DNA from: Dendrobates tinctorius
Taxonomy: Eukaryota
Length of the DNA stretch: 64,000 nucleotides
Assembly: GCF_039654945.1 (NCBI RefSeq)
Contig: NW_027361910.1
Span: forward strand, 1,550,001 to 1,614,000
Direction: 5' to 3'
Shown here: one piece after another, positions 9,678-44,853 of the stretch
How positions within the stretch are numbered: position 1 is the stretch's first letter
How the letters are laid out: the number at the start of each line of letters is the position of its first letter
Translations under genes and position numbers: made by a program
The notes under the pieces: generated by a model
Databases searched by the model: none
The model's input: only the letters and a program-made list of their open reading frames with translations
What the model was told of the DNA's origin: nothing

Positions 9678-10084
9678 TTTGTAACAAGGTGGTACGGGGT
9701 GGTAGTCATAGCTGAGTCCACTAGGTTACAGTCTGTGAGCACCCCGGCCCCTTGCACATAAATAGACAATTCCAGTCCAGCCCCAGGTCACAGTGGGTTA
9801 CCTCAGAATCACGGTTGCTCTCCATGTTGGAACAGCATCCTCCGGATGCACAACATGTCACACTCTTTAGGGCCCAACAGTGGCAACTTGTTTAATGAAG
9901 ATAAAGCATAGAAGAATATAATATAATTCCTGAACTGTCCCTATTCAGAGATGCTGCTCCTTCAGCAGCAGTAGCAAAAGCATCAGCTCCCAACGGCTCC
10001 TGGAAGCTCACAGTCACCAAGATGGCAAAATCACAATTCCCGTGCCCTGTTCCACTGCCCGGCAGTCCTTGGCAGTTTGAACTC

Positions 10085-13015: not shown

Positions 13016-16000
13016 TTAACCCCTTAGTTACATTGGACGTACTATTCCGTCCATGTGACCTGGGAGTTAAGTCCCATGGACGGAATAGTACGTCATACGC
13101 GATCAGCTGCGCTCATGGGGGGAGTGCAGCTGATCACGGCAGGGTGTCAGCTGATTATAACAGCTGACACCCGGCACTATGTGCCAGGAGTGGTCACGGA
13201 CTGCTCCCGACGCATTAACCCCAGGCACACTGTGATCAAACATGATTACAGTGTACCGGGGGCATAGGGAAGAATCGTGCAAGGAGGGGGCTCCATCCTG
13301 CAGGCCCCCGGATCCAATATAGCCGCAGGGGCTTTTGAGGTCCTGCAGGGAGGCAGCTTTCTCAGTGCCTGCTGAGAAGCCGCCTGCAGTGCCTGTCAGA
13401 TCGATAATCTGACACAGTGCACTGCAAAGTGTCAGATCAGCCATCTGACACTATGTAGTAATGTCCCCACCTGGAACAATATAATAAAGTTAAAAAAAAA
13501 TCATGTGTAAAAATAATTTTTTAAAAATTCCTAAATAAATAAATAAAAAAATTCCCTAATAAATTCTATTTTTTGTAAAAAAAACCCCAATAAAAGTACA
13601 CATATTTAGTATTGCTGCATCTGTAACAACCCGCCCTATAAAACTGTCCCACTAGTTAACCCTTTTAGTGAACCCTTTAAAAAAAAACAAGGTAAAGAAC
13701 AATGCTTTATCATCATACCGCCGAACAAAAAGTGCAATAACACGCGATTAAAAGACGGATATAAATAAAAATGGTACCGCTGAAAACGTCATCTTGTCCC
13801 GCAAAAAACGAGCTGCCATACAGTGTCATCAGCAAAAAAATAAAAAAGTTATAGCTCGCAGAATAAAGCGATGCAAAAATAATTATTTTTTTATATAAAA
13901 TTGTTTTTATTGTATAAAAGCGCCAAAACATAGAAAAATATATAAATGAGGTATAGCTGTAATCATACTGACCCAAAAAATAAAACCGCTTTATCAATTT
14001 AACCACACGCCAAATGGTGTAAGCGCCCTGTTATGATTGAGTCACCGTAGGAGGCAGACACAAAAATAGAAGCTACGTCCAGAAAACCAGAGAAGTTGGC
14101 AACTATCAGATTGCAGACCCCTGAACCTATCAACACAACTAGCAGTAGCCGTGGGGGGTTCCTACGATGCCTTAGACCCCTCGATCACAGCCAGAGTGCT
14201 ACATAGCCTAAAGACAGAAAAGGAAATCTAAACTGCCCCAGAGCTGACCCCAAAGTAAAAGGCAGCCCACAACATATAATGACGGTGAAGCAAGATGAAA
14301 AAACACTCACACAGATAGAAAGATAGGCTGAGCAAACGATGGGGCCCAAGCTAGCTAAACAGTACAGGAAAGGAAGGTTGCTGTCTGCAATCTGCCAAAA
14401 CCCTATCAAAGACATAAGGCAACAAGCTGATATGAAAAAGACCCTGAAGCAGCTAGGCTTCAAAAACTAAATCAGCACTCAGGTATTTTCAGAAGACAGA
14501 GCTAAAGAAATTCAGCACACCCCAGCAGGGAATGGCAGAAATCCAGAAAAACAAAGCAAAACAAAGTCTAAGCACAAATGCAAAAAGCCGAGCAGAAAAC
14601 ATAGCTTTAGAGGAGCAGGAATTCAGACTGGTCTCCAAGGATCCCACAGAGAAATCACCCACAGGGCAGAAGGGCGTTGGCAGCCTTATATCCAGTCAGT
14701 GACTCCACTCAGCTAGTCATCATCATCAGACTCAGGTGTTTGATAATCAGGCTCACTACCTTTCTTTACCAGAAGAGGGAGTTCCTTGGGCCTCAGTACT
14801 GAAGGGGAAAATGAACTCACAACAGCGCCCCCCCAAAAGAAATTCATTAAACGCTGGTTTTTGTTCATTCTGCGTCCCAAAAATCGGAATAAAAAGCATT
14901 CAAAAAATGTCACGTGCCCGAAAATGGTACCAATAAAAACGTTAACTCATCCCTCAAAAAATAAGATCTCACATAACTCTGTGGGTCAAAATACGGAAAA
15001 ATTATGGCTCTCAAAATGTGGTGATGCAAAAACTATTTTTTGCAATAACAAGCTTTTTTTAGCGTGTGATAGCGGCCAAACATAAAAACCCGCTATAAAT
15101 AGTAAATCAAACCCCCTTTATCACCCCCTTAGTTAGGGAAAAATAATTAAAATAAAAAAATGTATTTCATTTTCCCATTAGGGTTAGGGCTAGGGTTAGG
15201 GGTGTGTTGGGGTTAGGGTTTGAGTTAGAATTGGGGGGTTTCCACTGTTCAGGGACATGACCTCTGATCTCAAGTCCAACCAATTCTGCATTGAAAAAGT
15301 CAAACAGTGCACCTTCCCTTCCAAGCTCTGCCATGCGCCCAAACAGTAGTTTACCCCCACATATGGGGTATCAGCCTACTCAGGACAAATTGAACAACAA
15401 CTTTTGGAGTCCAATTTCTCTTGTTACTCTTGGAAAATAAAAAAATTGGGGGCAAAAATGTCATTTTTTTGGAAAAAAAATATGATTTTTTTTATTTTTA
15501 TCGCTCTACGTTTTAAACTTCTGTGAAGCACTTGTGGGTACAAAGTGCTCACCACACATCTAGCTAACTTCCTTGGGGTTCTAGTTTCCAAAATGGGGTC
15601 ACTTGTGGGGGGTTTCCACTGTTTAGGCACATCAGGAGCTCTCCAAATGCGACATGAAACCCGCAGACCATTCCATCAAAATCTGCATTCCAAAACGTCA
15701 CTACTTCCATTCCGAGCCCCAACGTGTGCCCATACAGTAGTTTTCTCCCACATATGGGGTATCAGCGTACTCAGGACAAATTGGACAACAACTTTTGGGG
15801 TCCAATTTCTCCTGTTACCCTTGGGATAAAAAAATTGGGACTTAAAGATCATGTTTGTGGAAAAAATATGATTTTTTATTTTCACTCCCGGGAGTTATAA
15901 ACTTCTGTGAAGCACTCGGGGGGTTCAAAGTGCTCACCACACATCTAGATAAGTTCCTTCGGGGGTCTAGTTTTCAAAATGGCATCACTTGAGGGGGATT

Positions 16001-18875: not shown

Positions 18876-20094
18876 TTTGAAGTATACAAAAACAATAATT
18901 AATGACAAGATAACATAAAATAAAATGTAAAAAAAACAAAATAATAAATAGATGTGCCATTTGTGACAAGATTAACAATGCAAGATACAGCTAAATGTAT
19001 CAAAGTAATTTTTCAAAAGTATGAGCAATACACCCTTCAAAAGTACACATTATAAAAAAGAGTTCAGACAGGTCAAAATGCTTATCATAAGGGATCTGGA
19101 GTGAGGTCCCAAAAGACTATATCGCAATGGACGACTGTCCAAAAAGAGAAAGAATTAGCAAAAATTATAATACTGTCAATAATTGAGGCATCCAAACTAA
19201 ATGTGGAAGCTACATGAAGGAATCATAAAGTACCAAAAAAATCCCCTGTTAATGGGAAATAAGTAATAGCATAACTCAGAAAACAGTATATATCAACAAA
19301 GAGCCATATCTCAACTATTAAGTGAAAATTAAGGACCAAAAGAGTTTTAGCATAAAAAATAAATTTTATTGCATAATAATTAAAAACAACAGCAGAGCAA
19401 CAATGCTAAAACAGGCAGTGGTAGACATAAATGGTAGATGATATCTAGAAAAGAATCCAAGTGGAAAGGGCATTACTCCCTCAAAGTACTCAATGATAAA
19501 TCACATCCATGTAGTGTAAATATAATCTAGAGTGCCTTATTCATGAATCTGCCATATTTTATATAGTAGAGGTAATAGAGAGTATATCTTTTGCCAAAGA
19601 ATTTATTTTAATAAATTCACTAGAATGTTAATTCTCAGCTGAGAAAAAAATGGGACCAATATAGTGTAATGTACATGACGCCGTGAGCAGTAACCACCAC
19701 ACGGAGAATAGATTAAATAGGTTACAAAAAGCTGCACCAAACATATGAGCTCACATAAAGTGGCAAAAGTTACAAATAAATACAAGTAATTGCCACAATG
19801 TGAGCCGGCATATTCACGAAGAGCAACATAAATAAACAGTTAGTTGCTCAGCAGAATAAACCACATATTAATGTGAATAAAACTGGGTGCAAATTGAAAA
19901 GAAAATGCAAATAATAACCTCAGCAAATATTGGCGCAGATAAGCCCATACAAATGACCAAACTAAGGCCAAAGCAAAGTATTCTCTACTAGGCAGAGAAA
20001 AAAAGACCTATTCATGCAAGTTGAACCGGATAACAATTGAAAAATAGAGTAACGTAACACTTACATGAAGTGACTATGTGCTGCCACTGCCTGC

Positions 20095-20134
20095 CGCCTC
20101 TACGCGCGTTGCGCCTTGGCTTCCTCAGGAGGCG
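20095..20134 (-). ncRNA. Hammerhead ribozyme motif (GCAA core variant), left 3' pLTR
   Basis: Identical to 25375-25414 in reverse complement. Confidence 0.75.
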
Positions 20135-21008
20135 TAACTCACACTAGCCCCGGAATTGATATATATAGGGTCAATAGGCAATAAACCACATCGCGCAACA
20201 GGTGTCATCCCGATTGAGCACATGCGCAATGCCAGACCACAAGACTCCCCATTCAGAAGTCTGAAAGTAAGTGACGCATGCGCTGATGTATCCCGACTCA
20301 GTAAATCAGAGATCCTCCTTCAGCGCTCATAGGGAGCAAATGGATACCGCTGCATAAGCAGCAGAACACCACAAGCGCACCTGGTGAGCGTGTCAGGAGA
20401 TCTCAAGTAGGGAAAATCCTGGGCATGCGTACCAATCAGACAAAAAAACAAAAGAAAAAGATATGATCAAAATGTGAGCAACATTTGTAAAAATATTACT
20501 GAAAAAATGATAAAGTGTATGGAATAAAAACAAAAAATTGGATACTAGTGCCAAATGGATTATGCAGAAAATGAGACAAGTGATTTGGTGAATAAAATAC
20601 AGAAAATAATATCTATAATATCCCCAATAATCAATCCCAAAATAATGGGGACAAAAAGATGCTACCTAACAATAATGATAGTGATAAATAAGTACCAAAT
20701 AAATTGTACAGAATATGTAACTAACAGTATTGGTGAACAATAATAAAATACATAGAATATAATAATATTAATAATATCCCCAATGTTCATTCACTCAATC
20801 AATGAGGACAAATATCCCAAAGTCTTCTTCTTTGTGAGTGAGATACGCTTCATTTTCTGTGTAATAAACAAGATCCACAACCAAGAGCAGACTGAATGAG
20901 GTAAATCGAATGGAATGGAAACTAAAAATAATAAGAATAAAAAAAATATTAAAAACCGAAGCAAAAAATAAAAACCATGTATACACAATATGAGAAATTT
21001 TATTTATA

Positions 21009-24000
21009 TTATAAAAAGGATCCAAAACCATTATTCTCATTTAAACCCACTGGTATCATCGTGTTAAGCCTATAGATCCATCTGCTTTCTACCTGTGAAA
21101 GAGTTTGAAATAAATTTCCACCCCTCGTACCCAACGATACCTGATCAATTGCAAAAACACGAAGATCATCAGCACGAGAATGATGAAATGCACGAAAATG
21201 CCTCGGTAATGTCTTCAATTGGTCCAGATCCTTAGCCTCCTTAGATTTTTCGATATCTCGAACATGCTCGCGAATTCTAATTCTAAGCTCTCTTGTAGTC
21301 ATTCCTATGTAAATCTTTTTGCAAGAACAACTTGCATAATATATCACACCCTTAGATGAACAGGTAAGGCATTTTCTGATTGAAAAGGTCTTGGAATGAT
21401 CTGAATTTTGAAATGTATTCATTTTAAGTGTATTAGAACATGCTTTACAAGTTCGACAAGGGTAAAATCCTTGGAGTTCACCAAAAATACCCTTTTGTAC
21501 TTTTTCGTTGGAGGTTAGATGACTCCTTACAAGTAGATCAGAAAGATTTTTAGATCTTTTGGCTGTAATACAAGGTCTAGATGGCAATGTCTTTTTCAAA
21601 ATAGGATCTATTTGTAACACATGCCAGTGTTTATTGATTATACCAGTAAAGTTATCCCATTGATCATTAAACGGGGTAATTAGACGAACTTGATTATTAT
21701 CCCTAGGTTTGGAATTTCTCTTGTATAGCAATTGATCCCTAGGGATTTCTTGTACTCTATTATAAGCTCTACGAATTTGCCTATGACCATATCCTCTTTC
21801 TCTAAATCTGGAATATAAATCTGCAGCTTGATTTTGGTATGTCTTTTCCGAAGAGCAAATCCTCTTTGCTCGCAAAAACTGCCCCACTGGAATTGAGCGT
21901 ATAGTGGATTTTAGATGAGAGGACTTAGCGTGTAGAATTGAATTAGTGGCCGTAGGTTTTCTATATATATCAGTCGATACAGATCCATCATCATTGACTG
22001 AAATATCGATGTCCAAAAAACTAACTCTCTTCCCATAGGAATAAGTGAGTTTTATGTTCAGATCGTTATCATTCAATGCAGACATGAATGTTTTTAATTC
22101 ATCCAACGGGCCCTCCCATACAAACATCACATCATCTATGTATCTCATCCAATTGTGGGCCTTTTCAATATTGGTAACAGGAGAACACTGAAAGATTTCC
22201 CTCTCCCAAAAACCCAAAAATAAATTGGCATAAGCCGGAGCACAAGCCGCCCCCATGGCTGTACCTTGAGTTTGCAAAAATACTTGTTCTTTAAATAAAA
22301 AACAGTTGTGCGTCAGAATAAATTCTAACAGAATAATTATAAGGGCTGCCAAAAGGGGGTCCAAATTACTATTTCTCAAAAACCAGGAGGTAGCTCTAAG
22401 TCCCTGGTCATGGCGAATGGAGGTGTATAACGCCTCCACATCAGCCGTGACAAGGATCATATCATCTCCCAGATGTAGCTGGTCTAACCTCCGTAGAGCC
22501 GCAGTTGTATCAAGAATATGGGAGGGTAGAGTGGTCACCAAGGGCTTCAGATAGTAATCTACTATCTGACATATCAGTTCACTAAGTCCTTCCTTTCCGG
22601 ACACGATAGGACGGCCGGGCGGATCCTCAATGTTCTTATGTATTTTTGGGATTAAATATAAAGTGGGCAGTTTAGGTTTTAAAGATTCAACAAATTCCAA
22701 AAGTGATTTGGGGATAATACCCTTCTCATGTGCCTCTAACAGAATATCATTTAGTTCTTTATGATATGCAGGAAGAGGACTGAAAGTCAATTTTTTATAG
22801 CAATTAGTGTCCGATAATAATTTATGAGCCTGTTTTTCATAAAGGTCACGTGGCCAAAGAACAAGATTGCCACCTTTATCGGCTCTTTTAAAGATTACAT
22901 CTTTCCAACCTTGCATTTCCATAATTGCTTTTTTATCACTCATAAAAGTTGGATTAAAGCGATAGTTTTTCTTAAGTTCCTCTATATCATGAGTGACCAA
23001 TCTCACAAAAGTCTCAACTGCCGAGCATGTGTTAAGGTTAGGAAATTTTTTTGATTTATTAAACAAGGAAACGGGAAAAGAACTCACCGCTTCCATAGGG
23101 TTGCTCTCCTCTGCTAAGGATTCTAAAATTTCCAGAGCAGCTTTCTCTTCCTCAGAATTGAGTGACAATCCCATAGTACTTTTCTCATGGAATCTCTTTA
23201 GTATCAGTTTTCTCGCGAACAGGTGAACATCTTTTATGACCGTGAAGGAATCTAATTGTTGAGATGGAGAAAAGGATAAACCTTTTTCTAACAATTCTAC
23301 CTGTTCATTAGATAAAATATGCGAGGATAGATTAATTACCTTAGGTTTATCATTTCTCCTGGTACCAGAGTTAGATTGATATCTTGCACTTCCTCTGCCC
23401 CTACCACCATATCTTGTTTTAATACGTCTGGGAGTATAATATTCCCTTTCGTGAGTTGAAGTGGTATTACTGGATATAGAAGACACCGAAGACACAGATG
23501 AACTTCTTATCTCTGATTGTTTCTGATCTTCTACTGAAATTCTATTTTGCCAACGAAAGACTTTTTTCTGATCATAATCCATCACATCACGTTGATATTT
23601 TTTCATTTTATTTTTACTGATCTGTTGTTCCCATTTCTCCATATCATGATTGAGATCCTGAAAGAAATTTTCCAGGGCCTCTTTTGACAATTTGGCTACC
23701 AACTCTTCTTGTAATTTGTTCAGCTCAATATCCAATTCTTCCAAAATAGAAGCATTTTTGATATTGATGATCTCCATAAAAGACATAGAGCATGCTGAGG
23801 AAACACTTTCCCATTTAGATATTAACTCAGTATCATCCAGACTAAAGGTTGGATAGAGTTGTATCCGCAGGCCACGTGGAATGATTTTTTGTTTAATATA
23901 ATTATCTAGGGATGTTTTAGTCCACCAAATCCTAGTTTTTTTATTAACCAAGTTTTTATATTTCATCATTAATCCTTTATCATCATATTGGGTATGATTA

Positions 24001-24080
24001 AAATTAGCAATTGAGCTCTGTTTGAATAAATCCAATGCTTTATCCTGCCAGACCTTTTCCCTGGCTTTGAAATCCATCAT
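21009..24080 (-). CDS. PLE reverse transcriptase / GIY-YIG endonuclease, 1023 aa (Neptune-type)
   Basis: ADKGG, PKIHK, GRPIVS, DVEALYTSI, GTAMG, YIDD, FLD; Cys linker CRTCKAC; GVIY...IYIGMT; REH; no stops. Confidence 0.97.
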   Translation of the reverse strand: MMDFKAREKVWQDKALDLFKQSSIANFNHTQYDDKGLMMKYKNLVNKKTRIWWTKTSLDNYIKQKIIPRGLRIQLYPTFSLDDTELISKWESVSSACSMSFMEIINIKNASILEELDIELNKLQEELVAKLSKEALENFFQDLNHDMEKWEQQISKNKMKKYQRDVMDYDQKKVFRWQNRISVEDQKQSEIRSSSVSSVSSISSNTTSTHEREYYTPRRIKTRYGGRGRGSARYQSNSGTRRNDKPKVINLSSHILSNEQVELLEKGLSFSPSQQLDSFTVIKDVHLFARKLILKRFHEKSTMGLSLNSEEEKAALEILESLAEESNPMEAVSSFPVSLFNKSKKFPNLNTCSAVETFVRLVTHDIEELKKNYRFNPTFMSDKKAIMEMQGWKDVIFKRADKGGNLVLWPRDLYEKQAHKLLSDTNCYKKLTFSPLPAYHKELNDILLEAHEKGIIPKSLLEFVESLKPKLPTLYLIPKIHKNIEDPPGRPIVSGKEGLSELICQIVDYYLKPLVTTLPSHILDTTAALRRLDQLHLGDDMILVTADVEALYTSIRHDQGLRATSWFLRNSNLDPLLAALIIILLEFILTHNCFLFKEQVFLQTQGTAMGAACAPAYANLFLGFWEREIFQCSPVTNIEKAHNWMRYIDDVMFVWEGPLDELKTFMSALNDNDLNIKLTYSYGKRVSFLDIDISVNDDGSVSTDIYRKPTATNSILHAKSSHLKSTIRSIPVGQFLRAKRICSSEKTYQNQAADLYSRFRERGYGHRQIRRAYNRVQEIPRDQLLYKRNSKPRDNNQVRLITPFNDQWDNFTGIINKHWHVLQIDPILKKTLPSRPCITAKRSKNLSDLLVRSHLTSNEKVQKGIFGELQGFYPCRTCKACSNTLKMNTFQNSDHSKTFSIRKCLTCSSKGVIYYASCSCKKIYIGMTTRELRIRIREHVRDIEKSKEAKDLDQLKTLPRHFRAFHHSRADDLRVFAIDQVSLGTRGGNLFQTLSQVESRWIYRLNTMIPVGLNENNGFGSFL

Positions 24081-24984
24081 AGGGAATTAAACTGTGGTAA
24101 AACAGAAAATATACATTAAGTACCAAAAAAATCCCCTGTTAATGGGAAATAAGTAATAGCATAACTCAGAAAACAGTATATATCAACAAAGAGCCATATC
24201 TCAACTATTAAGTGAAAATTAAGGACCAAAAGAGTTTTAGCATAAAAAATAAATTTTATTGCATAATAATTAAAAACAACAGCAGAGCAACAATGCTAAA
24301 ACAGGCAGTGGTAGACATAAATGGTAGATGATATCTAGAAAAGAATCCAAGTGGAAAGGGCATTACTCCCTCAAAGTACTCAATGATAAATCACATCCAT
24401 GTAGTGTAAATATAATCTAGAGTGCCTTATTCATGAATCTGCCATATTTTATATAGTAGAGGTAATAGAGAGTATATCTTTTGCCAAAGAATTTATTTTA
24501 ATAAATTCACTAGAATGTTAATTCTCAGCTGAGAAAAAAATGGGACCAATATAGTGTAATGTACATGACGCCGTGAGCAGTAACCACCACACGGAGAATA
24601 GATTAAATAGGTTACAAAAAGCTGCACCAAACATATGAGCTCACATAAAGTGGCAAAAGTTACAAATAAATACAAGTAATTGCCACAATGTGAGCCGGCA
24701 TATTCACGAAGAGCAACATAAATAAACAGTTAGTTGCTCAGCAGAATAAACCACATATTAATGTGAATAAAACTGGGTGCAAATTGAAAAGAAAATGCAA
24801 ATAATAACCTCAGCAAATATTGGCGCAGATAAGCCCATACAAATGACCAAACTAAGGCCAAAGCAAAGTATTCTCTACTAGGCAGAGAAAAAAAGACCTA
24901 TTCATGCAAGTTGAACCGGATAACAATTGAAAAATAGAGTAACGTAACACTTACATGAAGTGACTATGTGCTGCCACTGCCTGC

Positions 24985-25024
24985 CGCCTCTACGCGCGTT
25001 GCGCCTTGGCTTCCTCAGGAGGCG
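24985..25024 (-). ncRNA. Hammerhead ribozyme motif (GCAA core variant), left 5' pLTR
   Basis: Identical to 25375-25414 in reverse complement. Confidence 0.75.
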
Positions 25025-25340
25025 TAACTCACACTAGCCCCGGAATTGATATATATAGGGTCAATAGGCAATAAACCACATCGCGCAACAGGTGTCATCC
25101 CGATTGAGCACATGCGCAATGCCAGACCACAAGACTCCCCATTCAGAAGTCTGAAAGTAAGTGACGCATGCGCTCCCTATGAGCGCTGAAGGAGGATCTC
25201 TGATTTACTGAGTCGGGATACATCAGCGCATGCGTCACTTACTTTCAGACTTCTGAATGGGGAGTCTTGTGGTCTGGCATTGCGCATGTGCTCAATCGGG
25301 ATGACACCTGTTGCGCGATGTGGTTTATTGCCTATTGACC

Positions 25341-25350
25341 CTATATATAT
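25341..25350 (+). promoter_or_regulatory. Candidate TATA box of the PLE pLTR promoter
   Basis: CTATATATAT ~25 nt upstream of the hammerhead. An analogous CCTATTTAAGG lies upstream of the 7894-7934 hammerhead. Confidence 0.5.
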
Positions 25351-25374
25351 CAATTCCGGGGCTAGTGTGAGTTA

Positions 25375-25414
25375 CGCCTCCTGAGGAAGCCAAGGCGCAA
25401 CGCGCGTAGAGGCG
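25375..25414 (+). ncRNA. Minimal type I hammerhead ribozyme motif (GCAA core variant), right 5' pLTR
   Basis: CGCCTC-CTGAGGA-A-GCC-AA-GGC-GCAA-CGCGCG-TA-GAGGCG: perfect 6-bp stem I, 3-bp stem II, palindromic stem III. Confidence 0.8.
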
Positions 25415-25444
25415 GCAGGCAGTGGCAGCACATAGTCACTTCAT

Positions 25445-26307
25445 GTAAGTGTTACGTTACTCTATTTTTCAATTGTTATCCGGTTCAACTTGCATGAATA
25501 GGTCTTTTTTTCTCTGCCTAGTAGAGAATACTTTGCTTTGGCCTTAGTTTGGTCATTTGTATGGGCTTATCTGCGCCAATATTTGCTGAGGTTATTATTT
25601 GCATTTTCTTTTCAATTTGCACCCAGTTTTATTCACATTAATATGTGGTTTATTCTGCTGAGCAACTAACTGTTTATTTATGTTGCTCTTCGTGAATATG
25701 CCGGCTCACATTGTGGCAATTACTTGTATTTATTTGTAACTTTTGCCACTTTATGTGAGCTCATATGTTTGGTGCAGCTTTTTGTAACCTATTTAATCTA
25801 TTCTCCGTGTGGTGGTTACTGCTCACGGCGTCATGTACATTACACTATATTGGTCCCATTTTTTTCTCAGCTGAGAATTAACATTCTAGTGAATTTATTA
25901 AAATAAATTCTTTGGCAAAAGATATACTCTCTATTACCTCTACTATATAAAATATGGCAGATTCATGAATAAGGCACTCTAGATTATATTTACACTACAT
26001 GGATGTGATTTATCATTGAGTACTTTGAGGGAGTAATGCCCTTTCCACTTGGATTCTTTTCTAGATATCATCTACCATTTATGTCTACCACTGCCTGTTT
26101 TAGCATTGTTGCTCTGCTGTTGTTTTTAATTATTATGCAATAAAATTTATTTTTTATGCTAAAACTCTTTTGGTCCTTAATTTTCACTTAATAGTTGAGA
26201 TATGGCTCTTTGTTGATATATACTGTTTTCTGAGTTATGCTATTACTTATTTCCCATTAACAGGGGATTTTTTTGGTACTTAATGTATATTTTCTGTTTT
26301 ACCACAG
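25445..26307 (+). other. Predicted 5'UTR intron of the PLE (mirrored at 24092-24954)
   Basis: Donor CAT|GTAAGT at 25445; acceptor TTTTCTGTTTTACCACAG| at 26307, 11 nt before the ATG at 26319. Confidence 0.65.
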
Positions 26308-26318
26308 TTTAATTCCCT

Positions 26319-29300
26319 ATGATGGATTTCAAAGCCAGGGAAAAGGTCTGGCAGGATAAAGCATTGGATTTATTCAAACAGAGCTCAATTGCTAATTTTA
26401 ATCATACCCAATATGATGATAAAGGATTAATGATGAAATATAAAAACTTGGTTAATAAAAAAACTAGGATTTGGTGGACTAAAACATCCCTAGATAATTA
26501 TATTAAACAAAAAATCATTCCACGTGGCCTGCGGATACAACTCTATCCAACCTTTAGTCTGGATGATACTGAGTTAATATCTAAATGGGAAAGTGTTTCC
26601 TCAGCATGCTCTATGTCTTTTATGGAGATCATCAATATCAAAAATGCTTCTATTTTGGAAGAATTGGATATTGAGCTGAACAAATTACAAGAAGAGTTGG
26701 TAGCCAAATTGTCAAAAGAGGCCCTGGAAAATTTCTTTCAGGATCTCAATCATGATATGGAGAAATGGGAACAACAGATCAGTAAAAATAAAATGAAAAA
26801 ATATCAACGTGATGTGATGGATTATGATCAGAAAAAAGTCTTTCGTTGGCAAAATAGAATTTCAGTAGAAGATCAGAAACAATCAGAGATAAGAAGTTCA
26901 TCTGTGTCTTCGGTGTCTTCTATATCCAGTAATACCACTTCAACTCACGAAAGGGAATATTATACTCCCAGACGTATTAAAACAAGATATGGTGGTAGGG
27001 GCAGAGGAAGTGCAAGATATCAATCTAACTCTGGTACCAGGAGAAATGATAAACCTAAGGTAATTAATCTATCCTCGCATATTTTATCTAATGAACAGGT
27101 AGAATTGTTAGAAAAAGGTTTATCCTTTTCTCCATCTCAACAATTAGATTCCTTCACGGTCATAAAAGATGTTCACCTGTTCGCGAGAAAACTGATACTA
27201 AAGAGATTCCATGAGAAAAGTACTATGGGATTGTCACTCAATTCTGAGGAAGAGAAAGCTGCTCTGGAAATTTTAGAATCCTTAGCAGAGGAGAGCAACC
27301 CTATGGAAGCGGTGAGTTCTTTTCCCGTTTCCTTGTTTAATAAATCAAAAAAATTTCCTAACCTTAACACATGCTCGGCAGTTGAGACTTTTGTGAGATT
27401 GGTCACTCATGATATAGAGGAACTTAAGAAAAACTATCGCTTTAATCCAACTTTTATGAGTGATAAAAAAGCAATTATGGAAATGCAAGGTTGGAAAGAT
27501 GTAATCTTTAAAAGAGCCGATAAAGGTGGCAATCTTGTTCTTTGGCCACGTGACCTTTATGAAAAACAGGCTCATAAATTATTATCGGACACTAATTGCT
27601 ATAAAAAATTGACTTTCAGTCCTCTTCCTGCATATCATAAAGAACTAAATGATATTCTGTTAGAGGCACATGAGAAGGGTATTATCCCCAAATCACTTTT
27701 GGAATTTGTTGAATCTTTAAAACCTAAACTGCCCACTTTATATTTAATCCCAAAAATACATAAGAACATTGAGGATCCGCCCGGCCGTCCTATCGTGTCC
27801 GGAAAGGAAGGACTTAGTGAACTGATATGTCAGATAGTAGATTACTATCTGAAGCCCTTGGTGACCACTCTACCCTCCCATATTCTTGATACAACTGCGG
27901 CTCTACGGAGGTTAGACCAGCTACATCTGGGAGATGATATGATCCTTGTCACGGCTGATGTGGAGGCGTTATACACCTCCATTCGCCATGACCAGGGACT
28001 TAGAGCTACCTCCTGGTTTTTGAGAAATAGTAATTTGGACCCCCTTTTGGCAGCCCTTATAATTATTCTGTTAGAATTTATTCTGACGCACAACTGTTTT
28101 TTATTTAAAGAACAAGTATTTTTGCAAACTCAAGGTACAGCCATGGGGGCGGCTTGTGCTCCGGCTTATGCCAATTTATTTTTGGGTTTTTGGGAGAGGG
28201 AAATCTTTCAGTGTTCTCCTGTTACCAATATTGAAAAGGCCCACAATTGGATGAGATACATAGATGATGTGATGTTTGTATGGGAGGGCCCGTTGGATGA
28301 ATTAAAAACATTCATGTCTGCATTGAATGATAACGATCTGAACATAAAACTCACTTATTCCTATGGGAAGAGAGTTAGTTTTTTGGACATCGATATTTCA
28401 GTCAATGATGATGGATCTGTATCGACTGATATATATAGAAAACCTACGGCCACTAATTCAATTCTACACGCTAAGTCCTCTCATCTAAAATCCACTATAC
28501 GCTCAATTCCAGTGGGGCAGTTTTTGCGAGCAAAGAGGATTTGCTCTTCGGAAAAGACATACCAAAATCAAGCTGCAGATTTATATTCCAGATTTAGAGA
28601 AAGAGGATATGGTCATAGGCAAATTCGTAGAGCTTATAATAGAGTACAAGAAATCCCTAGGGATCAATTGCTATACAAGAGAAATTCCAAACCTAGGGAT
28701 AATAATCAAGTTCGTCTAATTACCCCGTTTAATGATCAATGGGATAACTTTACTGGTATAATCAATAAACACTGGCATGTGTTACAAATAGATCCTATTT
28801 TGAAAAAGACATTGCCATCTAGACCTTGTATTACAGCCAAAAGATCTAAAAATCTTTCTGATCTACTTGTAAGGAGTCATCTAACCTCCAACGAAAAAGT
28901 ACAAAAGGGTATTTTTGGTGAACTCCAAGGATTTTACCCTTGTCGAACTTGTAAAGCATGTTCTAATACACTTAAAATGAATACATTTCAAAATTCAGAT
29001 CATTCCAAGACCTTTTCAATCAGAAAATGCCTTACCTGTTCATCTAAGGGTGTGATATATTATGCAAGTTGTTCTTGCAAAAAGATTTACATAGGAATGA
29101 CTACAAGAGAGCTTAGAATTAGAATTCGCGAGCATGTTCGAGATATCGAAAAATCTAAGGAGGCTAAGGATCTGGACCAATTGAAGACATTACCGAGGCA
29201 TTTTCGTGCATTTCATCATTCTCGTGCTGATGATCTTCGTGTTTTTGCAATTGATCAGGTATCGTTGGGTACGAGGGGTGGAAATTTATTTCAAACTCTT

Positions 29301-29390
29301 TCACAGGTAGAAAGCAGATGGATCTATAGGCTTAACACGATGATACCAGTGGGTTTAAATGAGAATAATGGTTTTGGATCCTTTTTATAA
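26319..29390 (+). CDS. PLE reverse transcriptase / GIY-YIG endonuclease, 1023 aa (Neptune-type)
   Basis: Translation identical to 21009-24080. Confidence 0.97.
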   Translation: MMDFKAREKVWQDKALDLFKQSSIANFNHTQYDDKGLMMKYKNLVNKKTRIWWTKTSLDNYIKQKIIPRGLRIQLYPTFSLDDTELISKWESVSSACSMSFMEIINIKNASILEELDIELNKLQEELVAKLSKEALENFFQDLNHDMEKWEQQISKNKMKKYQRDVMDYDQKKVFRWQNRISVEDQKQSEIRSSSVSSVSSISSNTTSTHEREYYTPRRIKTRYGGRGRGSARYQSNSGTRRNDKPKVINLSSHILSNEQVELLEKGLSFSPSQQLDSFTVIKDVHLFARKLILKRFHEKSTMGLSLNSEEEKAALEILESLAEESNPMEAVSSFPVSLFNKSKKFPNLNTCSAVETFVRLVTHDIEELKKNYRFNPTFMSDKKAIMEMQGWKDVIFKRADKGGNLVLWPRDLYEKQAHKLLSDTNCYKKLTFSPLPAYHKELNDILLEAHEKGIIPKSLLEFVESLKPKLPTLYLIPKIHKNIEDPPGRPIVSGKEGLSELICQIVDYYLKPLVTTLPSHILDTTAALRRLDQLHLGDDMILVTADVEALYTSIRHDQGLRATSWFLRNSNLDPLLAALIIILLEFILTHNCFLFKEQVFLQTQGTAMGAACAPAYANLFLGFWEREIFQCSPVTNIEKAHNWMRYIDDVMFVWEGPLDELKTFMSALNDNDLNIKLTYSYGKRVSFLDIDISVNDDGSVSTDIYRKPTATNSILHAKSSHLKSTIRSIPVGQFLRAKRICSSEKTYQNQAADLYSRFRERGYGHRQIRRAYNRVQEIPRDQLLYKRNSKPRDNNQVRLITPFNDQWDNFTGIINKHWHVLQIDPILKKTLPSRPCITAKRSKNLSDLLVRSHLTSNEKVQKGIFGELQGFYPCRTCKACSNTLKMNTFQNSDHSKTFSIRKCLTCSSKGVIYYASCSCKKIYIGMTTRELRIRIREHVRDIEKSKEAKDLDQLKTLPRHFRAFHHSRADDLRVFAIDQVSLGTRGGNLFQTLSQVESRWIYRLNTMIPVGLNENNGFGSFL

Positions 29391-30264
29391 TATAAATAAA
29401 ATTTCTCATATTGTGTATACATGGTTTTTATTTTTTGCTTCGGTTTTTAATATTTTTTTTATTCTTATTATTTTTAGTTTCCATTCCATTCGATTTACCT
29501 CATTCAGTCTGCTCTTGGTTGTGGATCTTGTTTATTACACAGAAAATGAAGCGTATCTCACTCACAAAGAAGAAGACTTTGGGATATTTGTCCTCATTGA
29601 TTGAGTGAATGAACATTGGGGATATTATTAATATTATTATATTCTATGTATTTTATTATTGTTCACCAATACTGTTAGTTACATATTCTGTACAATTTAT
29701 TTGGTACTTATTTATCACTATCATTATTGTTAGGTAGCATCTTTTTGTCCCCATTATTTTGGGATTGATTATTGGGGATATTATCGATATTATTTTCTGT
29801 ATTTTATTCACCAAATCACTTGTCTCATTTTCTGCATAATCCATTTGGCACTAGTATCCAATTTTTTGTTTTTATTCCATACACTTTATCATTTTTTCAG
29901 TAATATTTTTACAAATGTTGCTCACATTTTGATCATATCTTTTTCTTTTGTTTTTTTGTCTGATTGGTACGCATGCCCAGGATTTTCCCTACTTGAGATC
30001 TCCTGACACGCTCACCAGGTGCGCTTGTGGTGTTCTGCTGCTTATGCAGCGGTATCCATTTGCTCCCTATGAGCGCTGAAGGAGGATCTCTGATTTACTG
30101 AGTCGGGATACATCAGCGCATGCGTCACTTACTTTCAGACTTCTGAATGGGGAGTCTTGTGGTCTGGCATTGCGCATGTGCTCAATCGGGATGACACCTG
30201 TTGCGCGATGTGGTTTATTGCCTATTGACCCTATATATATCAATTCCGGGGCTAGTGTGAGTTA

Positions 30265-30304
30265 CGCCTCCTGAGGAAGCCAAGGCGCAACGCGCGTAGA
30301 GGCG
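30265..30304 (+). ncRNA. Hammerhead ribozyme motif (GCAA core variant), right 3' pLTR
   Basis: Identical to 25375-25414. Confidence 0.75.
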
Positions 30305-31115
30305 GCAGGCAGTGGCAGCACATAGTCACTTCATGTAAGTGTTACGTTACTCTATTTTTCAATTGTTATCCGGTTCAACTTGCATGAATAGGTCTTTTTT
30401 TCTCTGCCTAGTAGAGAATACTTTGCTTTGGCCTTAGTTTGGTCATTTGTATGGGCTTATCTGCGCCAATATTTGCTGAGGTTATTATTTGCATTTTCTT
30501 TTCAATTTGCACCCAGTTTTATTCACATTAATATGTGGTTTATTCTGCTGAGCAACTAACTGTTTATTTATGTTGCTCTTCGTGAATATGCCGGCTCACA
30601 TTGTGGCAATTACTTGTATTTATTTGTAACTTTTGCCACTTTATGTGAGCTCATATGTTTGGTGCAGCTTTTTGTAACCTATTTAATCTATTCTCCGTGT
30701 GGTGGTTACTGCTCACGGCGTCATGTACATTACACTATATTGGTCCCATTTTTTTCTCAGCTGAGAATTAACATTCTAGTGAATTTATTAAAATAAATTC
30801 TTTGGCAAAAGATATACTCTCTATTACCTCTACTATATAAAATATGGCAGATTCATGAATAAGGCACTCTAGATTATATTTACACTACATGGATGTGATT
30901 TATCATTGAGTACTTTGAGGGAGTAATGCCCTTTCCACTTGGATTCTTTTCTAGATATCATCTACCATTTATGTCTACCACTGCCTGTTTTAGCATTGTT
31001 GCTCTGCTGTTGTTTTTAATTATTATGCAATAAAATTTATTTTTTATGCTAAAACTCTTTTGGTCCTTAATTTTCACTTAATAGTTGAGATATGGCTCTT
31101 TGTTGATATATGAAG

Positions 31116-34100
31116 GAATCATAGAATCATAGAATCGTAGTGTTGGAAGGGACCTCCTGGGCCATCTGGTCCAACCCCCTGCTCAAAACAGGATTCGCTA
31201 AATCATCCCAGACAGATGTCTGTCCAGCCTCTGTTTGAAGACTTCTATTGAAGGAGAACGCACCACCTCTCGTGGCAGTCTGTTCCACTCATTGATCACT
31301 CTAACTGTCAAAAGGTTTTTTCTAATATCTAATCTGTGTCTCCTCCCATTCAGTTTCATCCCTTTGCTTCTAGTCTTTCCTTGTGCAAATGAGAATAAAA
31401 ATGATCCTTCTACAATGTGACAGCCCTTGAGCTATTTGTAGACAGCTATTAAGTCTCCTCTCTGTCTTCTCTTTTGCAAGCTAAACATTCCCAAATCCTG
31501 CAACCTTTCCTCATAAGACAGGGTTTGCAGACTGGTCACCATTCTGGTCGCTCTTTTCTGAATTTGCTCCAGTTTGTTGATGTCTTTTTTAAAATGTGGC
31601 ACCCAAAACTGGACACAGTATTCCAGATGAGGTCTGACCAAAGAGGAGTAGAGGGCAATAATGACTTCACGTGATCTAGACTGTATGCTTCTGTTAATAC
31701 ATCCTAGAATTGCATTTGCCTTTTTTGCTGCTGCATCACACTGCTGACTCATATTCAGTCTGTGATCTATTAGTATACCCAAGTCTTTTTCACATGTGCT
31801 GTTGCTTAGCCCTATTACTCCCATTCTGTATATGCTTTTTTCATTTTTATTGCCCAGATGTAGTACTTTGCATTTTTCCCTGTTAAAAACCATTCTGTTA
31901 GTTGCTGCCCACTGCTCCAGTTTATTTATATCTTTTTGAATCCTCTCCCTCTCTTCTCTAGTATTAGCTATCCCTCCTAGCTTTGTGTCATCAGCAAATT
32001 TAATCTTTTTGAATCCTCTCTCTTTCTTCTCTAGTATTAGCTATCCCTCCTAGCTTTGTGTCATCAGCAAATTTAATCAGTTTACCCCTAATTCCTTCAT
32101 CTAAATCGTTGATAAAGATGTTGAACAATACAGGGCCCAGGACAGAACCCTGTGGTACCCCACTTGAGACATTCTTCCTACTGGATGTGCAGCCATTTAC
32201 GACCACTCTTTTGGTCCGATCACTAAGCCAGTTATGATTCCACCTAACAGTTGCCTTGTCCATTCCATACTTAGTCATTTTTTCAATAAGGATTGTGTGA
32301 GATACTTTGTCAAATGCTTTGCTGAAGTCAAGATATACTATATCTACAGCATTTCCCTGATCCACCAATCAGTGATTCTGTCATAGAAGGAAATTAAGTT
32401 AGTCTGACATGACTTATTAGTTACAAACCCATGCTGACTCTGTTTAATCACTTCATTCTTATCTAGGTACTTACATACATGTTGTTTAATAATTTGTTCA
32501 AAGATCTTTCCTGGTATAGACGTCAGACTCACCGGCCTATAGTTGCCTGGGTCCACCTTCTTCCCCTTTTTGAAGATAGGAACAACATTTACTCTTCTCA
32601 AGTCTTCTGGGACTTCTCCTGATGTCCAAGAATTTTCAAAGATTATGGAGAGGGGTTCAAAAATTTCTTCTGCTATCTCCTTCAGCACTCTGGGGTGTAA
32701 TTCATCTGGACCTGGAGACTTGAATTCATTTAGGTTAGCTAAGTGTTTCCTCACTATCTTTCTGTTTATAGATATCCTGGATTCTTTTATTCCCTTAATA
32801 GGACAGTGAAGAACAGTTGATGTTACATTTCCTTTCTGAGAGTAAACAGATGCAAAATAGGAATTTAAAAGTTCGTCCATCTCAATATCCTGGCTTACCA
32901 TTTCATCATTTTCATCCTGTAAAAATCCTATAGTATCTTTGACTTTTCTTTTACTTTTGACATATCCCCAAAATCCTTCATTATTGCTTTTGACATCTCT
33001 TGCAAGCCTCAATTCATTGTCAGCTTTAATAATCTGATTTGTGCCCTGCAGGTTCTGCAGACAGCATTATATTCTTCTTTAGATATGCCTCCCTCTTTCC
33101 ATTTTATAAACATTTCTTTCTTCCTTTTTAGCATGTGCTTGTTCTGTGTTCATCCATCCTGGTTTCCTTAAATGCTTCCTATTCTTCCCTCTTTTCGGAA
33201 TTGTTAACAACTGTGCTTTAAGAATTTCATTTTTCAAGATTTCCCATCCTTCCTGTACATTTTTGTCTTTAAGGATATCCAGCCATTGGATCCCTTCAAT
33301 TCTCTTTCTGAGTCCCTTAAAATCTGCCTTTCAGAAATCTAACCTTGACGTCTGAGTCTTCACAGGTCTTCCTCCTCTAGTTATCCAAAATTCTAAAATA
33401 GCATGGTCGCTACCTCCTAGGGTCCCAGCCATTTTTACCTCCTCAACCATTTCCTCCCTGTTTATAAGGATTAGATCCAAGGTAGCAGTTCCCCTTGTTT
33501 TCTCCCCTACCTTTTGGAAGATAAAGTTGTCAGCAAGAGAGAATAAGAATTTCCTTGACCTGTTAGTTTTGCCTGAGAGAGATTCCCAACAAAGGTCTGG
33601 ATAGTTGAAATCTCCCATGACAACTATGTCATATTTTTTGAAGAACTTGGCCATTTGATGCATAAAGAGTTCATCCATACTTCAGCTTGCACAGGCGGTC
33701 TGTAGTAAATGCCTACAATGGTGTCCTTTCCATTGTTCTGTCCTTGTATTCTTACCCAAACAGTTTCCACAGAACTCCCAGTCTCTGAAGCTTCAATCTC
33801 TGTGCAGTTATATGCGTTTCTAACATACAATGCGACACCTCCTCCTCGTTTATCAAGTCTGTTTCTGGCAAATAAGTTGTATCCTTCTAGCCTTGTATTC
33901 CAATCATGTGTATTGTCCCACCAAGTTTCAGTGATTCCAATGACATCATATTTCTTTTCCTGTGTTAGTAGTTCCAATTCTCCTTGTTTGTTGCCCATGC
34001 TTTGTGCATTAGTATAGAAACATTTTAGTTTGTGATTGGCTTCTCTTTCTCCAATATTTGTATTAATTTGATTATTTTGTCTTTGTTCTTCCTTTCCACT

Positions 34101-34455
34101 TCTAATAGCAGAGTTCTCAATAACATTTATCAGGTGTATGGCTTTTTCTGGCCTTTTGCTTCCCTTCCCACATTGTTCTAGTTTAAAGCTCTCCTGATGA
34201 CTGTAGCAAGGCGACTTCCAAATACATGTTTTCCAGTCTTCGTAAGGTGCACCCCATCTCTAGCAAGTAGTCCATCGTTTAGGTAATTCACTCCGTGATC
34301 CAGAAATCCAAATCCTTGCTGACGGCACCATCGACGTTGCCAGTTGTTCACCTGCAGAATCTTATTCCACCTCCTTGTTCCATGGCCATCCACTGGGAGG
34401 ATGGAAGAGAAGACTACCTGTGCTCCCAGTTCTTTCACTTTCTTTCCTAAGTTTG
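31116..34455 (-). mobile_element. CR1 LINE: end of ORF1 (SGNH esterase-like) plus frameshifted ORF2 (APE + RT)
   Basis: [39 protein letters not shown]; ORF1 DGVHL; (ATTCTATG)n tail; ~73-bp internal tandem duplication near 31930-32075. Confidence 0.93.
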
Positions 34456-35589
34456 AAAGTATGAAAAGTAATGTGCCCATTTCAATGAGAAGGATGTATC
34501 TATAAAAATGAAATGAAACTATGTGCTATATGGTATATAAGACTGTTACTATTAGGGCCCAAAATCACAATAACCTGTGAAATGTTGGGTAAGTAAAGGA
34601 GAAAGGAATCACTAGAATGCCATGTGGGAACTGTCAGAGAAGAGCATTGACAGAAGGCGATTTGAATCATTTTAGAAAGGTGCTATGGTGTAATGGCATT
34701 CATGTAGCTTCCACATTTAGTTTGGATGTCTCACCTATTGACAAGAATTATAACTTTTTCTAATTCTTTCTCTGTTTGGACAGGCCTCCTTTGCGATATA
34801 GTTTTTTGGGACCGCTCTTCAGATCCCTTATGATATATTTTTTTTACCTCTCTGAACTTATTGTTATAATCTGCACTTTTGGAGGATATATTCTTCATAG
34901 TTTTGAAAAATTATTTTGATGCGTTTAATGTAGTTGTATCTTGCATTGTTAATCTCATCAGGAATGGCGTATCTCACACTGGCAATCCCTAAGTGCCAGA
35001 GGAGAGCATATATATCAGCGGGGAATGGTGAACACTGAGCAGCTGTGATAACCCAGGTAGGAAAGCTCCATGGAGCATCGACAGAACAGATTAAGCCTTG
35101 CACTGCTAGAAAGGAAAAAACCTGCACTTTAGAATGGTGAAGAACTTCTAACCAGCGCAGGTGTTCATGAATCCAGACATCGCACTTCTCTGGCCCTTCT
35201 CTGTGATGGTATTCCCATCACAGCAATTCTGGGGAAAGCAACTGAGCACAAAGTAAACTACATCAATAAGGTGTCTCTCAGGCAAAGATTTGAGAGCAGA
35301 CTCGGGTTTTAAGGTGTGCGGTTTAAACTCTCTTGAAGAAGCACCAAAAATGCAACATATTGAGGTTTGTAGGCAACAAAATCTTAGTTCAGCAAATGGA
35401 AGACACATCATACTTACCACCATTCATAATGAGAAGATGTCCAGCTGAGTCAGCAGCTGAAAACTAGCTGCAACAAAAGGTATCCAGCTACTCCCCTCAA
35501 CTATTTGGTCTTCATGGAAACATTGATACCAAAAGCCATATCTTCAACACGAAAACCAAGCTAATCGACTCAGATATGCATGAAAAGAT

Positions 35590-36922: not shown

Positions 36923-37061
36923 NNNNNNNNNNNNNNNNNNNNNNNNNNNNNNNNNNNNNNNNNNNNNNNNNNNNNNNNNNNNNNNNNNNNNNNNNNNNNN
37001 NNNNNNNNNNNNNNNNNNNNNNNNNNNNNNNNNNNNNNNNNNNNNNNNNNNNNNNNNNNNN
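36923..37061. other. Assembly gap
   Basis: Run of N. Confidence 1.
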
Positions 37062-43632: not shown

Positions 43633-44853
43633 CACTCACTGGCCACTTTATTAGGTACACCTGTCCAACTGTGTGTTAAGACTTAATTTCTAATCAGCCA
43701 ATCACATGGCGGCAACTCAGTGCATTTAGGCATGTAGACATGGTCAAGACAATCTCCTGCAGTTCAAACCGAGCATCAGTATGGGGAAGAAAGGTGATTT
43801 GAGTGCCTTTGAACATGGCATGATTGTTGGTGCCAGAAGGGCTGGTCTGAGAATTTCAGAAACTGCTGATCTACTGGGATTTTCACGCACAACCATCTCT
43901 AGGGTTTACAGAGAATGGTCCGAAAAAGAAAAAAAATCCAGTGAGCGGCAGTTCTGTGGCCGGAAATGCCATGTTGATGCCAGAGGTCAGAGGAGAATGG
44001 GCAGACTGGTTCGAGCTGATAGAAAGGCAACAGTGACTCAAATTGCCACCCGTTACAACCAAGGTAGGCAGAAGAGCATCTCTGAACGCACAGTGCGTCG
44101 AACTTTGAGGCAGATGGGCTACAGCAGCAGAAGACCACACTGGGTACCACTCCTCTCAGCTAAGAACAGGAAACTGAGGCTACAATTTGCACAAGCTCAT
44201 CGAAATTGGACAGTAGAAGATTGGAAAAACGTTGCCTGGTCTGATGAGTCTCGATTTCTGCTGCGACATTCGGATGGTAGGGTCAGAATTTGGCGTAAAC
44301 AACATGAAAGCATGGATCCATCCTGCCTTGTATCAACGGTTCAGGCTGGTGGTGGTGGTGTCATGGTGTGGGGAATTTTTTCTGGGCACTCTTTGGGCCC
44401 CTTGGTACCAATTGAGCATCGTTGCAACGCCACAGCCTACCTGAGTATTGTTGCTGACCATGTCCATCCCTTTATGACCACAATGTACCCAACATCTGAT
44501 GGCTACTTTCAGCAGGATAATGCGCCATGTCATAAAGCTCGAATCATCTCAGATTGGTTTCTTGAACATGACAATGAGTTTACTGTACTCAAATGGCCTC
44601 CTCAGTCACCAGATCTCAATCCAATAGAGCATCTTTGGGATGTGGTGGAACGGGAGATTCGCATCAGGGATGTGCAGCCGACAAATCTGCGCCAACTGTG
44701 TGATGCCATCATGTCAATATGGTCCAAAATCTCTGAGGAATGCTTCCAGCACCTTGTTGAATCTCTGCCACGAAGAATTGAGGCAGTTCTGAAGGCAAAA
44801 GGGGGTCCAACCCCTTACTAGCATGGTGTACCTAATAAAGTGGCCAGTGAGTG
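43633..44853 (+). mobile_element. Intact Tc1/mariner DD36E (Incomer-type) transposon, 1221 bp
   Basis: Perfect 29-bp TIR CACTCACTGGCCACTTTATTAGGTACACC; inserted in (TA)n. Confidence 0.95.
43781..44821 (+). CDS. DD36E transposase, 346 aa
   Basis: Paired-like [29 protein letters not shown], with 36 residues between the second D and the E. Confidence 0.95.

What the first reader, a model, noticed from the sequence alone, without database searches (positions are those of the whole stretch)
19214..31123. 11.9-kb palindrome of two complete, identical, head-to-head Penelope-like elements inserted as one event
Seen: position x pairs with 50399-x from ~19290 to 25174, around a 50-nt loop (25175-25224). 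Both 1023-aa ORFs are intact and identical. One 14-bp TSD (ATGAAGGAATCATA) flanks the pair. The arms join through GCT microhomology and differ by at least one base (20614 vs 29785). The left end is ~62 nt longer. Known: PLEs often carry an inverted 5' pLTR, but usually only a partial one. Inference: both target-strand nicks primed full-length cDNA (double TPRT) and the 5' ends were joined. The result is a very young, potentially active, divergently transcribed and cruciform-prone locus.
Basis: partly seen in the sequence, partly recalled or inferred. Interest (0 to 1): 0.85.

Follow-up and report, generated by a model that had tools for sequence, protein, structure and literature searches.

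The report
Back-to-back intact Penelope retrotransposon pair
A very young jumping gene in a frog-like genome was copied into both DNA strands at once, leaving two intact mirror-image copies in an 11.9-kb palindrome; it is an unusually complete case of a known insertion pattern, and the same form occurs in a poison frog.

Summary
The palindrome is real: 5,887-bp arms, one mismatch, a 50-nt spacer, identical intact 1023-aa ORFs and one 14-bp TSD. The protein is a Neptune-type Penelope-like element (PLE): telomerase-like RT, CxxCxxC linker, GIY-YIG with CCHH. The 60-62-nt extra at the left end is the published PLE 'tail', the gap between two RT start sites. Inverted 5' copy, one-sided tail and TSD are textbook PLE; only the full length of the inverted copy is unusual. 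It is not unique: Ranitomeya imitator has a 10.1-kb head-to-head pair with two intact ORFs, 15-bp TSD and 51-nt tail. This scan noted shorter palindrome-tail-TSD insertions elsewhere in this genome. Most likely both nicked strands primed reverse transcription; whether the second arm is a second full cDNA or a fold-back copy is unresolved. By-product: in five diverged relatives the tail ends 24-27 nt before the intron acceptor, at the branch-point position.

The parts
19214..19227 (+). Left target-site duplication, 14 bp
   Evidence: its first 5 nt continue the left-flank repeat (83% match to 34699-34974)
19228..19289 (-). PLE 'tail': pLTR positions ~1049-1110, present only at the left end; marks the outer RT start site
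   Evidence: matches 26222-26281; tail concept from PMC11167929 and PMC8557442
19228..20337 (-). Left copy, 3' pLTR (positions 1-1110, includes tail)
   Evidence: identical to 25172-26281
20338..21008 (-). Left copy, 3' UTR; holds the single arm difference at 20614
21009..24080 (-). Left ORF, 1023 aa, RT + GIY-YIG, intact
   Evidence: identical to right ORF
24118..25174 (-). Left copy, 5' pLTR (positions 54-1110), with its own TATA-like box, hammerhead-like motif (24985-25024) and intron (24092-24954)
25172..25174 (.). GCT microhomology at the head-to-head joint
25175..25224 (+). 50-nt spacer = pLTR positions 4-53 of the right copy; lies inside a predicted template hairpin (25183-25229)
25172..26281 (+). 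Right copy, 5' pLTR (positions 1-1110)
25342..25349 (+). TATA-like box, about 30 nt before the ribozyme motif (promoter inferred)
   Evidence: same motif described in PMC3846280
25375..25414 (+). Minimal type I hammerhead-like motif with GCAA (25397-25400) in place of GAAA; four copies
   Evidence: relatives L005, L009 and the small PLE at 7928 keep GAAA; no Rfam hammerhead hit
25445..26307 (+). Predicted retained 5' UTR intron, 863 nt (GTAAGT ... branch-like TTAAT at 26280-26284 ... pyrimidine tract, CAG)
   Evidence: acceptor position conserved in relatives; splicing not tested
26319..29390 (+). Right ORF, 1023 aa: helical N-terminus, telomerase-like RT (D547, YIDD 647-650), CxxCxxC 875-881, GIY-YIG 911-926 with C918/C920/H939/H961
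29391..30061 (+). Right copy, 3' UTR; holds 29785
30062..31109 (+). Right copy, 3' pLTR (positions 1-1048, match runs 2 nt into the TSD); no tail; marks the inner RT start site
31110..31123 (+). Right target-site duplication; its last 8 nt are in phase with the 8-mer tail of the flanking CR1
31116..34440 (-). Older, broken CR1-type LINE forming the right flank (target context, not part of the insert; far end approximate)

Best explanation
This is one very recent integration of an autonomous Neptune-type Penelope-like retrotransposon in a frog. The GIY-YIG endonuclease cut the two target strands 14 nt apart (inferred from the TSD). Each 3'-OH primed reverse transcription on unspliced, longer-than-unit element RNA: the top strand at the outer start site (pLTR 1110), the bottom strand at the inner one (about 1050), which is why one end has a 60-nt tail. 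Both cDNAs ran about 5.9 kb, through the ORF and almost the whole upstream pLTR; one stopped at position 54 inside a predicted RNA hairpin, the other at position 1. Their 3' ends annealed through GCT and each was filled in on the other, giving a head-to-head palindrome. Shown: anatomy, TSD, tail, microhomology, intact motifs, recurrence in another frog. From the literature: both-strand nicking and extension and two internal start sites in a Poseidon PLE. Inferred: that both arms are independent long cDNAs, and the promoter and intron. My confidence that it is a single PLE integration primed on both strands is about 0.9; the figure below is for the two-long-cDNA route.
For: Arms, TSD, tail, microhomology. 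The flanks were contiguous before insertion: left repeat runs into the TSD's first 5 nt, CR1 8-mer tail into its last 8. The tail cannot be copied from the right arm's end, so a second templated priming is needed. A PLE protein nicks and extends both strands, starts at two internal sites whose interval is the tail, and is modelled as a dimer (PMC11167929). Same form in R. imitator L007: 10.1 kb, two uninterrupted 1019-aa ORFs, 15-bp TSD, 51-nt tail. In L006 and the small PLE at 7409-9691 the arms start far apart on the template, so short-range fold-back cannot explain them and two cDNAs must have been joined. Relatives reach 1.8 to over 2.5 units, so 5.9 kb of synthesis is within reach.
Against: The two arms start only 53 nt apart on the template; in L005 it is 59 nt and in L007 about 130 nt with a template-switch patchwork, which suits fold-back. 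One mismatch and four identical pLTRs give no marker to tell the routes apart. No reads were seen. The in-vitro data are for a Poseidon, not a Neptune, protein.
Confidence: 0.5

Rival explanations
1. Same single integration, but only one long cDNA. The bottom-strand cDNA reached pLTR position 1, folded back on itself through 3 bp with a 50-nt loop and was copied along its whole length. The top-strand nick primed a short cDNA from the outer site (the tail plus a little more), which annealed to the fold-back strand and closed the insertion.
For: Short loop with microhomology and a template hairpin that brings positions 12-18 next to 52-58. Near-coincident arm starts in L005 and L007; the L007 centre reads like repeated snap-back. 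Self-priming was proposed for PLE palindromes in PMC3846280.
Against: Needs an extra step. A better 7-bp fold-back stem 11 nt away was not used. L006 and the small in-window PLE cannot be short-range fold-backs. The apparent coincidence of arm starts is partly selection bias (loci were chosen for full ORFs).
Confidence: 0.35
2. Assembly artefact: a fold-back chimeric long read or a mis-joined repeat created the mirror copy.
For: Arms are 99.98% identical; tandem and inverted PLEs are known to trouble assemblers (PMC8557442). Reads could not be checked.
Against: Two different flanks, an exact 14-bp TSD that rebuilds a coherent empty site, a 60-nt tail on one arm only, an asymmetric templated spacer, and the same form in an independent assembly of another species. 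No gap within 5.8 kb.
Confidence: 0.05
3. An ordinary single insertion was later duplicated in inverted form by a replication or repair template switch.
For: pLTR repeats and hairpins offer substrates; host fold-back inversions are well known (own knowledge; papers listed).
Against: The duplication stops exactly at the element's ends, copies no flank, keeps the TSD intact and adds a tail that the other end lacks. The same geometry recurs in L007.
Confidence: 0.05

Closest known systems
Neptune clade of endonuclease-containing Penelope-like elements (Arkhipova 2006; Craig et al. 2021, PMC8557442)
   Same: Single ORF with telomerase-like RT and C-terminal GIY-YIG; CX2-5CxxC linker and CCHH motif; pLTRs from partial tandem; 5' UTR intron in pLTR; inverted copy at the 5' end; tail at one end; TSD.
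   Different: The inverted copy is a full pLTR-ORF-pLTR, not the '5'-truncated' copy described as typical; the tail is 60 nt (44-74 in relatives here) against the 30-40 reported; the hammerhead core reads GCAA.
PAc, Poseidon element of Anolis carolinensis (Frangieh et al. 2024, PMC11167929)
   Same: Both target strands nicked and extended; two internal RT start sites whose interval is the genomic tail; ribozyme cleavage dispensable for insertion in vitro.
   Different: Poseidon lacks the CxxCxxC linker; its start sites lie about 111-118 nt and further into the ORF, whereas here they lie in the 5' UTR intron, 86 and 26 nt before the acceptor.
Adineta vaga Pen2a, Pen3, Pen4 (Arkhipova et al. 2013, PMC3846280)
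   Same: Head-to-head inverted pLTR that is a few tens of nt shorter than the direct one and overlaps it by microhomology; TATATATA box; tail; TSD; long tandem and inverted structures.
   Different: There the inverted part is a pLTR or a partial element, and the long forms could not be assembled whole.
Ranitomeya imitator locus L007
   Same: 10.1-kb head-to-head palindrome, two uninterrupted ORFs (49% identical to the window protein), one 15-bp TSD, one 51-nt tail, outer end 26 nt before the acceptor.
   Different: Its 5' pLTRs are cut to under 200 nt, so neither arm keeps the promoter region; arms differ at 17 of 3060 ORF positions; complex centre.
L1 twin priming (own knowledge: Ostertag and Kazazian 2001)
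   Same: Second target nick primes a second cDNA, giving a 5' inversion joined by microhomology under one TSD.
   Different: In L1 the two cDNAs cover different parts of one RNA; here they cover the same 5.9 kb, and the enzyme is a GIY-YIG, not an APE.

Membership tests
Penelope-like element (EN+) | RT most similar to telomerase RT | tested here: met
   Pfam RVT_1 E=2e-7; model pLDDT 85; the nine best Foldseek hits are telomerases, E 1.5e-9 to 3e-8, TM-scores low at 0.24-0.28
Penelope-like element (EN+) | C-terminal GIY-YIG endonuclease in the same ORF | tested here: met
   Pfam GIY-YIG E=0.0016, 19.1 bits, below the curated 22.6; GVIYY...KIYIG, R935, E998, N1014 present
Penelope-like element (EN+) | pLTR direct repeats from a partial tandem | tested here: met
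   Unit 4,890 bp; four copies of 1,050-1,110 nt
Penelope-like element (EN+) | Inverted 5' copy, one-sided tail, TSD | tested here: met
Penelope-like element (EN+) | Retained spliceosomal intron in the pLTR / 5' UTR | tested here: inconclusive
   Consensus donor, branch-like site and acceptor found, acceptor position conserved in relatives; splicing not shown, no RNA data
Penelope-like element (EN+) | Minimal hammerhead ribozyme in the pLTR | tested here: inconclusive
   Motif has stem I, CUGA-GA box, 2-bp stem II and palindromic stem III as in relatives, but GCAA for GAAA; no Rfam hammerhead hit; fold z-score 0.39
Neptune clade | CX2-5CxxC linker before GIY-YIG (absent in Penelope/Poseidon) plus CCHH motif | tested here: met
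   C875/C878/C881 and C918/C920/H939/H961 invariant in six frog proteins; definition from PMC8557442
Neptune clade | Phylogenetic placement with reference Neptune RTs (versus Nematis, which shares the linker) | not testable with these tools
   No named Repbase references are available here; vertebrates were reported to hold Neptune and Poseidon only (bioRxiv 10.64898/2026.07.22.740005)
Neptune clade | Bias for microsatellite targets | tested here: inconclusive
   Target overlaps a three-unit CR1 8-mer tail, but TSDs of L004, L005, L007 and the small PLE are not repeats
Penelope/Poseidon clade | Absence of the CX2-5CxxC linker | tested here: not met
   Linker present at 875-881

The most novel reading that the evidence does not exclude
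In Neptune elements the outer RT start site is set by the spliceosomal branch point of the pLTR intron: it lies 24-27 nt before the acceptor in five elements about 50% identical in protein. Recognition of the 3' splice region would then both position reverse transcription and keep the template unspliced, explaining why PLEs retain introns. Two enzymes in one dimer would copy the same RNA from the two sites into both target strands, with full head-to-head doubles as a regular product.
Probability: 0.15. Interest if true: 0.7.

Novelty: new variant of a known kind. Interest (0 to 1): 0.4.

Why it matters
The integration cycle of PLEs is still largely unresolved, and in the papers I could search only a Poseidon protein has been studied full-length in vitro. 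This locus is a clean fossil of one event: it fixes the cut stagger (14 nt), both RT start sites and the joint. It shows that the inverted 5' copy can be a whole coding element, so one jump can plant two complete copies and a 12-kb palindrome. It also supplies an intact, very young Neptune ORF for biochemistry, and hints that hammerhead cleavage may be dispensable in vivo, since all four ribozyme motifs carry a core change. It does not define a new kind of element.

Tried and rejected
The window protein is not on record in the contig collection, so no sister copies of this exact family were fetched; I could not tell which allele at 20614/29785 is parental. No solved structure matched by sequence. 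The Rfam MIR862 hit at the centre (E 1e-8, 49.9 bits against a cut-off of 100) only reflects the perfect hairpin and is rejected. The bacterial promoter scan does not apply. A binomial test for near-coincident arm starts gave p=0.002, but I reject it: loci were picked for full ORFs, which confines arm starts to the pLTR, so the real chance is nearer 0.3 per case. A mini-exon start codon was considered; the ATG at 25443 is split by the donor and the translation printed used a boundary one base off, so it is void. An exon-skipping lariat as sole template was considered and is not supported, because both arms continue upstream of the donor without a break. Microsatellite targeting is not supported by relatives' TSDs. 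L001-L004 and L008-L011 show no inverted arm of the element. Paper searches found no description of a head-to-head pair with two whole ORFs, but subscription journals are missing. The N stretch at 36923-37061 was not filled or looked up.
Full report
Observation. The pairing x with 50399-x holds from 19288 to 25174, 5,887 bp, with one mismatch at 20614/29785 and a 50-nt spacer. The two 1023-aa ORFs are identical in DNA, and the 14-mer ATGAAGGAATCATA occurs only at 19214 and 31110. The only N gap is at 36923-37061 and was left alone.

Self-comparison shows four copies of a ~1.1-kb repeat. Numbering it from 25172, the right copy is pLTR(1-1110) - ORF - 3' UTR - pLTR(1-1050), with a unit of 4,890 bp. 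The left copy, on the minus strand, is pLTR(54-1110) - ORF - 3' UTR - pLTR(1-1110). So the spacer is pLTR 4-53 of the right copy, the joint is a GCT microhomology, and the extra 60 nt at the left end are pLTR 1051-1110. In the pLTR lie a TATATATA box (25342), a minimal hammerhead-like motif (25375-25414) with GCAA for GAAA in all four copies, and a consensus intron 25445-26307 ending 11 nt before the ATG. Promoter, ribozyme and intron are predictions.

Protein. Pfam finds RVT_1 and, on the C-terminal piece, a weak GIY-YIG (E 0.0016). The model is confident (pLDDT 85) and its nine best structural matches are telomerases. RT motifs, the CxxCxxC linker and the CCHH residues are present and invariant among frog relatives. 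By the definitions in PMC8557442 this is a Neptune-type PLE; no tree with named references was possible. The best named homologues are from Ranitomeya, Anomaloglossus, Engystomops and Hyla at 43-57% identity, so the host is very probably a frog.

Target and reality. The left flank is a repeat whose second copy (34699-34974, 83%) matches through the first 5 nt of the TSD; the right flank is a broken CR1 whose 8-mer tail is in phase with the last 8 nt of the TSD. Removing the insert leaves a coherent empty site. A fold-back read would not give different flanks, a TSD, a one-sided tail and a templated spacer.

Relatives. Of 11 loci fetched around homologues, L007 in Ranitomeya imitator has the same form: a 10.1-kb head-to-head palindrome, two uninterrupted 1019-aa ORFs, a 15-bp TSD and a 51-nt tail on one end. 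L005 has the classic form, a 573-bp inverted pLTR with 14-bp TSD and 44-nt tail; L006 has a short inverted arm; L001-L004 are partial tandems. In the window itself a small PLE at 7409-9691 has a 474-bp arm, a 74-nt tail and a 14-bp TSD. Arm lengths therefore run from about 150 bp to the full element, and this locus is the long end. Earlier notes of this scan report similar palindrome-tail-TSD insertions elsewhere in this genome; those are unchecked leads.

Literature. An inverted 5'-truncated copy and a tail at one end are described as typical of PLEs (PMC8557442). Head-to-head joints with microhomology and a slightly shorter inverted pLTR are described in rotifers, with self-priming proposed (PMC3846280). 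A purified Poseidon protein nicks and extends both strands, starts at two internal sites whose interval is the tail, is modelled as a dimer, and does not need ribozyme cleavage (PMC11167929). Minimal hammerheads in pLTRs are variable and weak (PMC4209133); I saw no GCAA variant in the parts read. I found no paper describing two whole ORFs head to head, within the limits of the library.

Mechanism. The TSD implies a 14-nt staggered cut. The top strand continues from the TSD as antisense of the element from position 1110, the bottom strand from about 1050, so both nicks were extended with cDNA-sense sequence. The tail cannot come from copying the right arm's end. Both arms include the intron and sequence upstream of the TATA box, so the template was unspliced and longer than one unit, or RT jumped templates. 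The open point is the left arm. Route A (0.5): a second long cDNA that stalled at position 54, inside the predicted hairpin 12-58, and annealed by GCT. Route B (0.35): fold-back of the first cDNA with a 50-nt loop, captured by a short tail-bearing cDNA. L006 and the small PLE need two cDNAs; L005 and L007 look like fold-backs. One mismatch cannot decide. My own binomial test is biased and I discard it. Artefact and later duplication get 0.05 each.

Consequences. Each arm keeps a predicted promoter and an intact ORF, so either could supply protein (inference). The promoters face outward and make the same RNA; double-stranded RNA needs a transcript through the centre. Long palindromes with short spacers are unstable (own knowledge), which fits the near-zero divergence and suggests such doubles are short-lived.

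By-product. The outer end maps 26 nt before the acceptor AG here, and 27, 24, 25 and 26 nt in L001, L002, L005 and L007; L003 and L004 end elsewhere (98 and about 160 nt). Here and in L007 the end falls in TT|AAT, which fits a branch-point consensus but also the ATT cleavage preference reported for the Poseidon enzyme. In Poseidon the start sites are in the ORF, so a branch point is not a general need. A link between RT start and splicing is the most novel reading left open (0.15).

Verdict. Real, young, Neptune-type PLE double insertion; known mechanism family, unusual completeness, seen in a second frog. New variant of a known kind; interest 0.4.

Noticed in passing
window 7409-9691: Small 5'-truncated PLE of another Neptune-type family: 14-bp TSD, 474-bp inverted arm that starts next to the hammerhead cleavage site, 74-nt tail, GAAA hammerhead core with CCGA for CUGA; C-terminal ORF piece 55% identical to the window protein.
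   Followed up: partly
window 26280-26307; L001:10621, L002:9522, L005:3645, L007:9432: Outer (tail) end of five diverged frog elements lies 24-27 nt before the intron acceptor, at the branch-point position.
   Followed up: partly
L007:4390-14568: Second head-to-head double with two intact ORFs in Ranitomeya imitator; centre shows several short template switches.
   Followed up: yes
L001:6378-6812 / 15469-15903 and L003:8369-8604 / 14473-14708: Related elements are flanked by 435-bp and 236-bp direct duplications of flank DNA instead of a 14-16-bp TSD; perhaps widely staggered nicks.
   Followed up: no
window 18950-19218 and 34699-34974: Inverted pair of an older repeat (83%) brackets the palindrome and the CR1; identity unknown.
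   Followed up: partly
window 31116-34440 (-): Frameshifted CR1-type LINE with 8-mer 3' tail; CpG-depleted (o/e 0.21) against 0.54 in the PLE ORF and 0.81 in its promoter region.
   Followed up: partly
window 52036-55238: Tandem array of about 146-154-bp units, 92-98% identical.
   Followed up: no
window 43781-44821, 57419-59842, 61637-62404: Tc1-type transposase ORF (346 aa), an RT ORF (807 aa) and a Harbinger-type DDE transposase piece.
   Followed up: no
L005:2390-15631: A related PLE spans 13 kb between its 14-bp TSDs, with about 8 kb between ORF end and 3' pLTR (later insertions or captured DNA).
   Followed up: no
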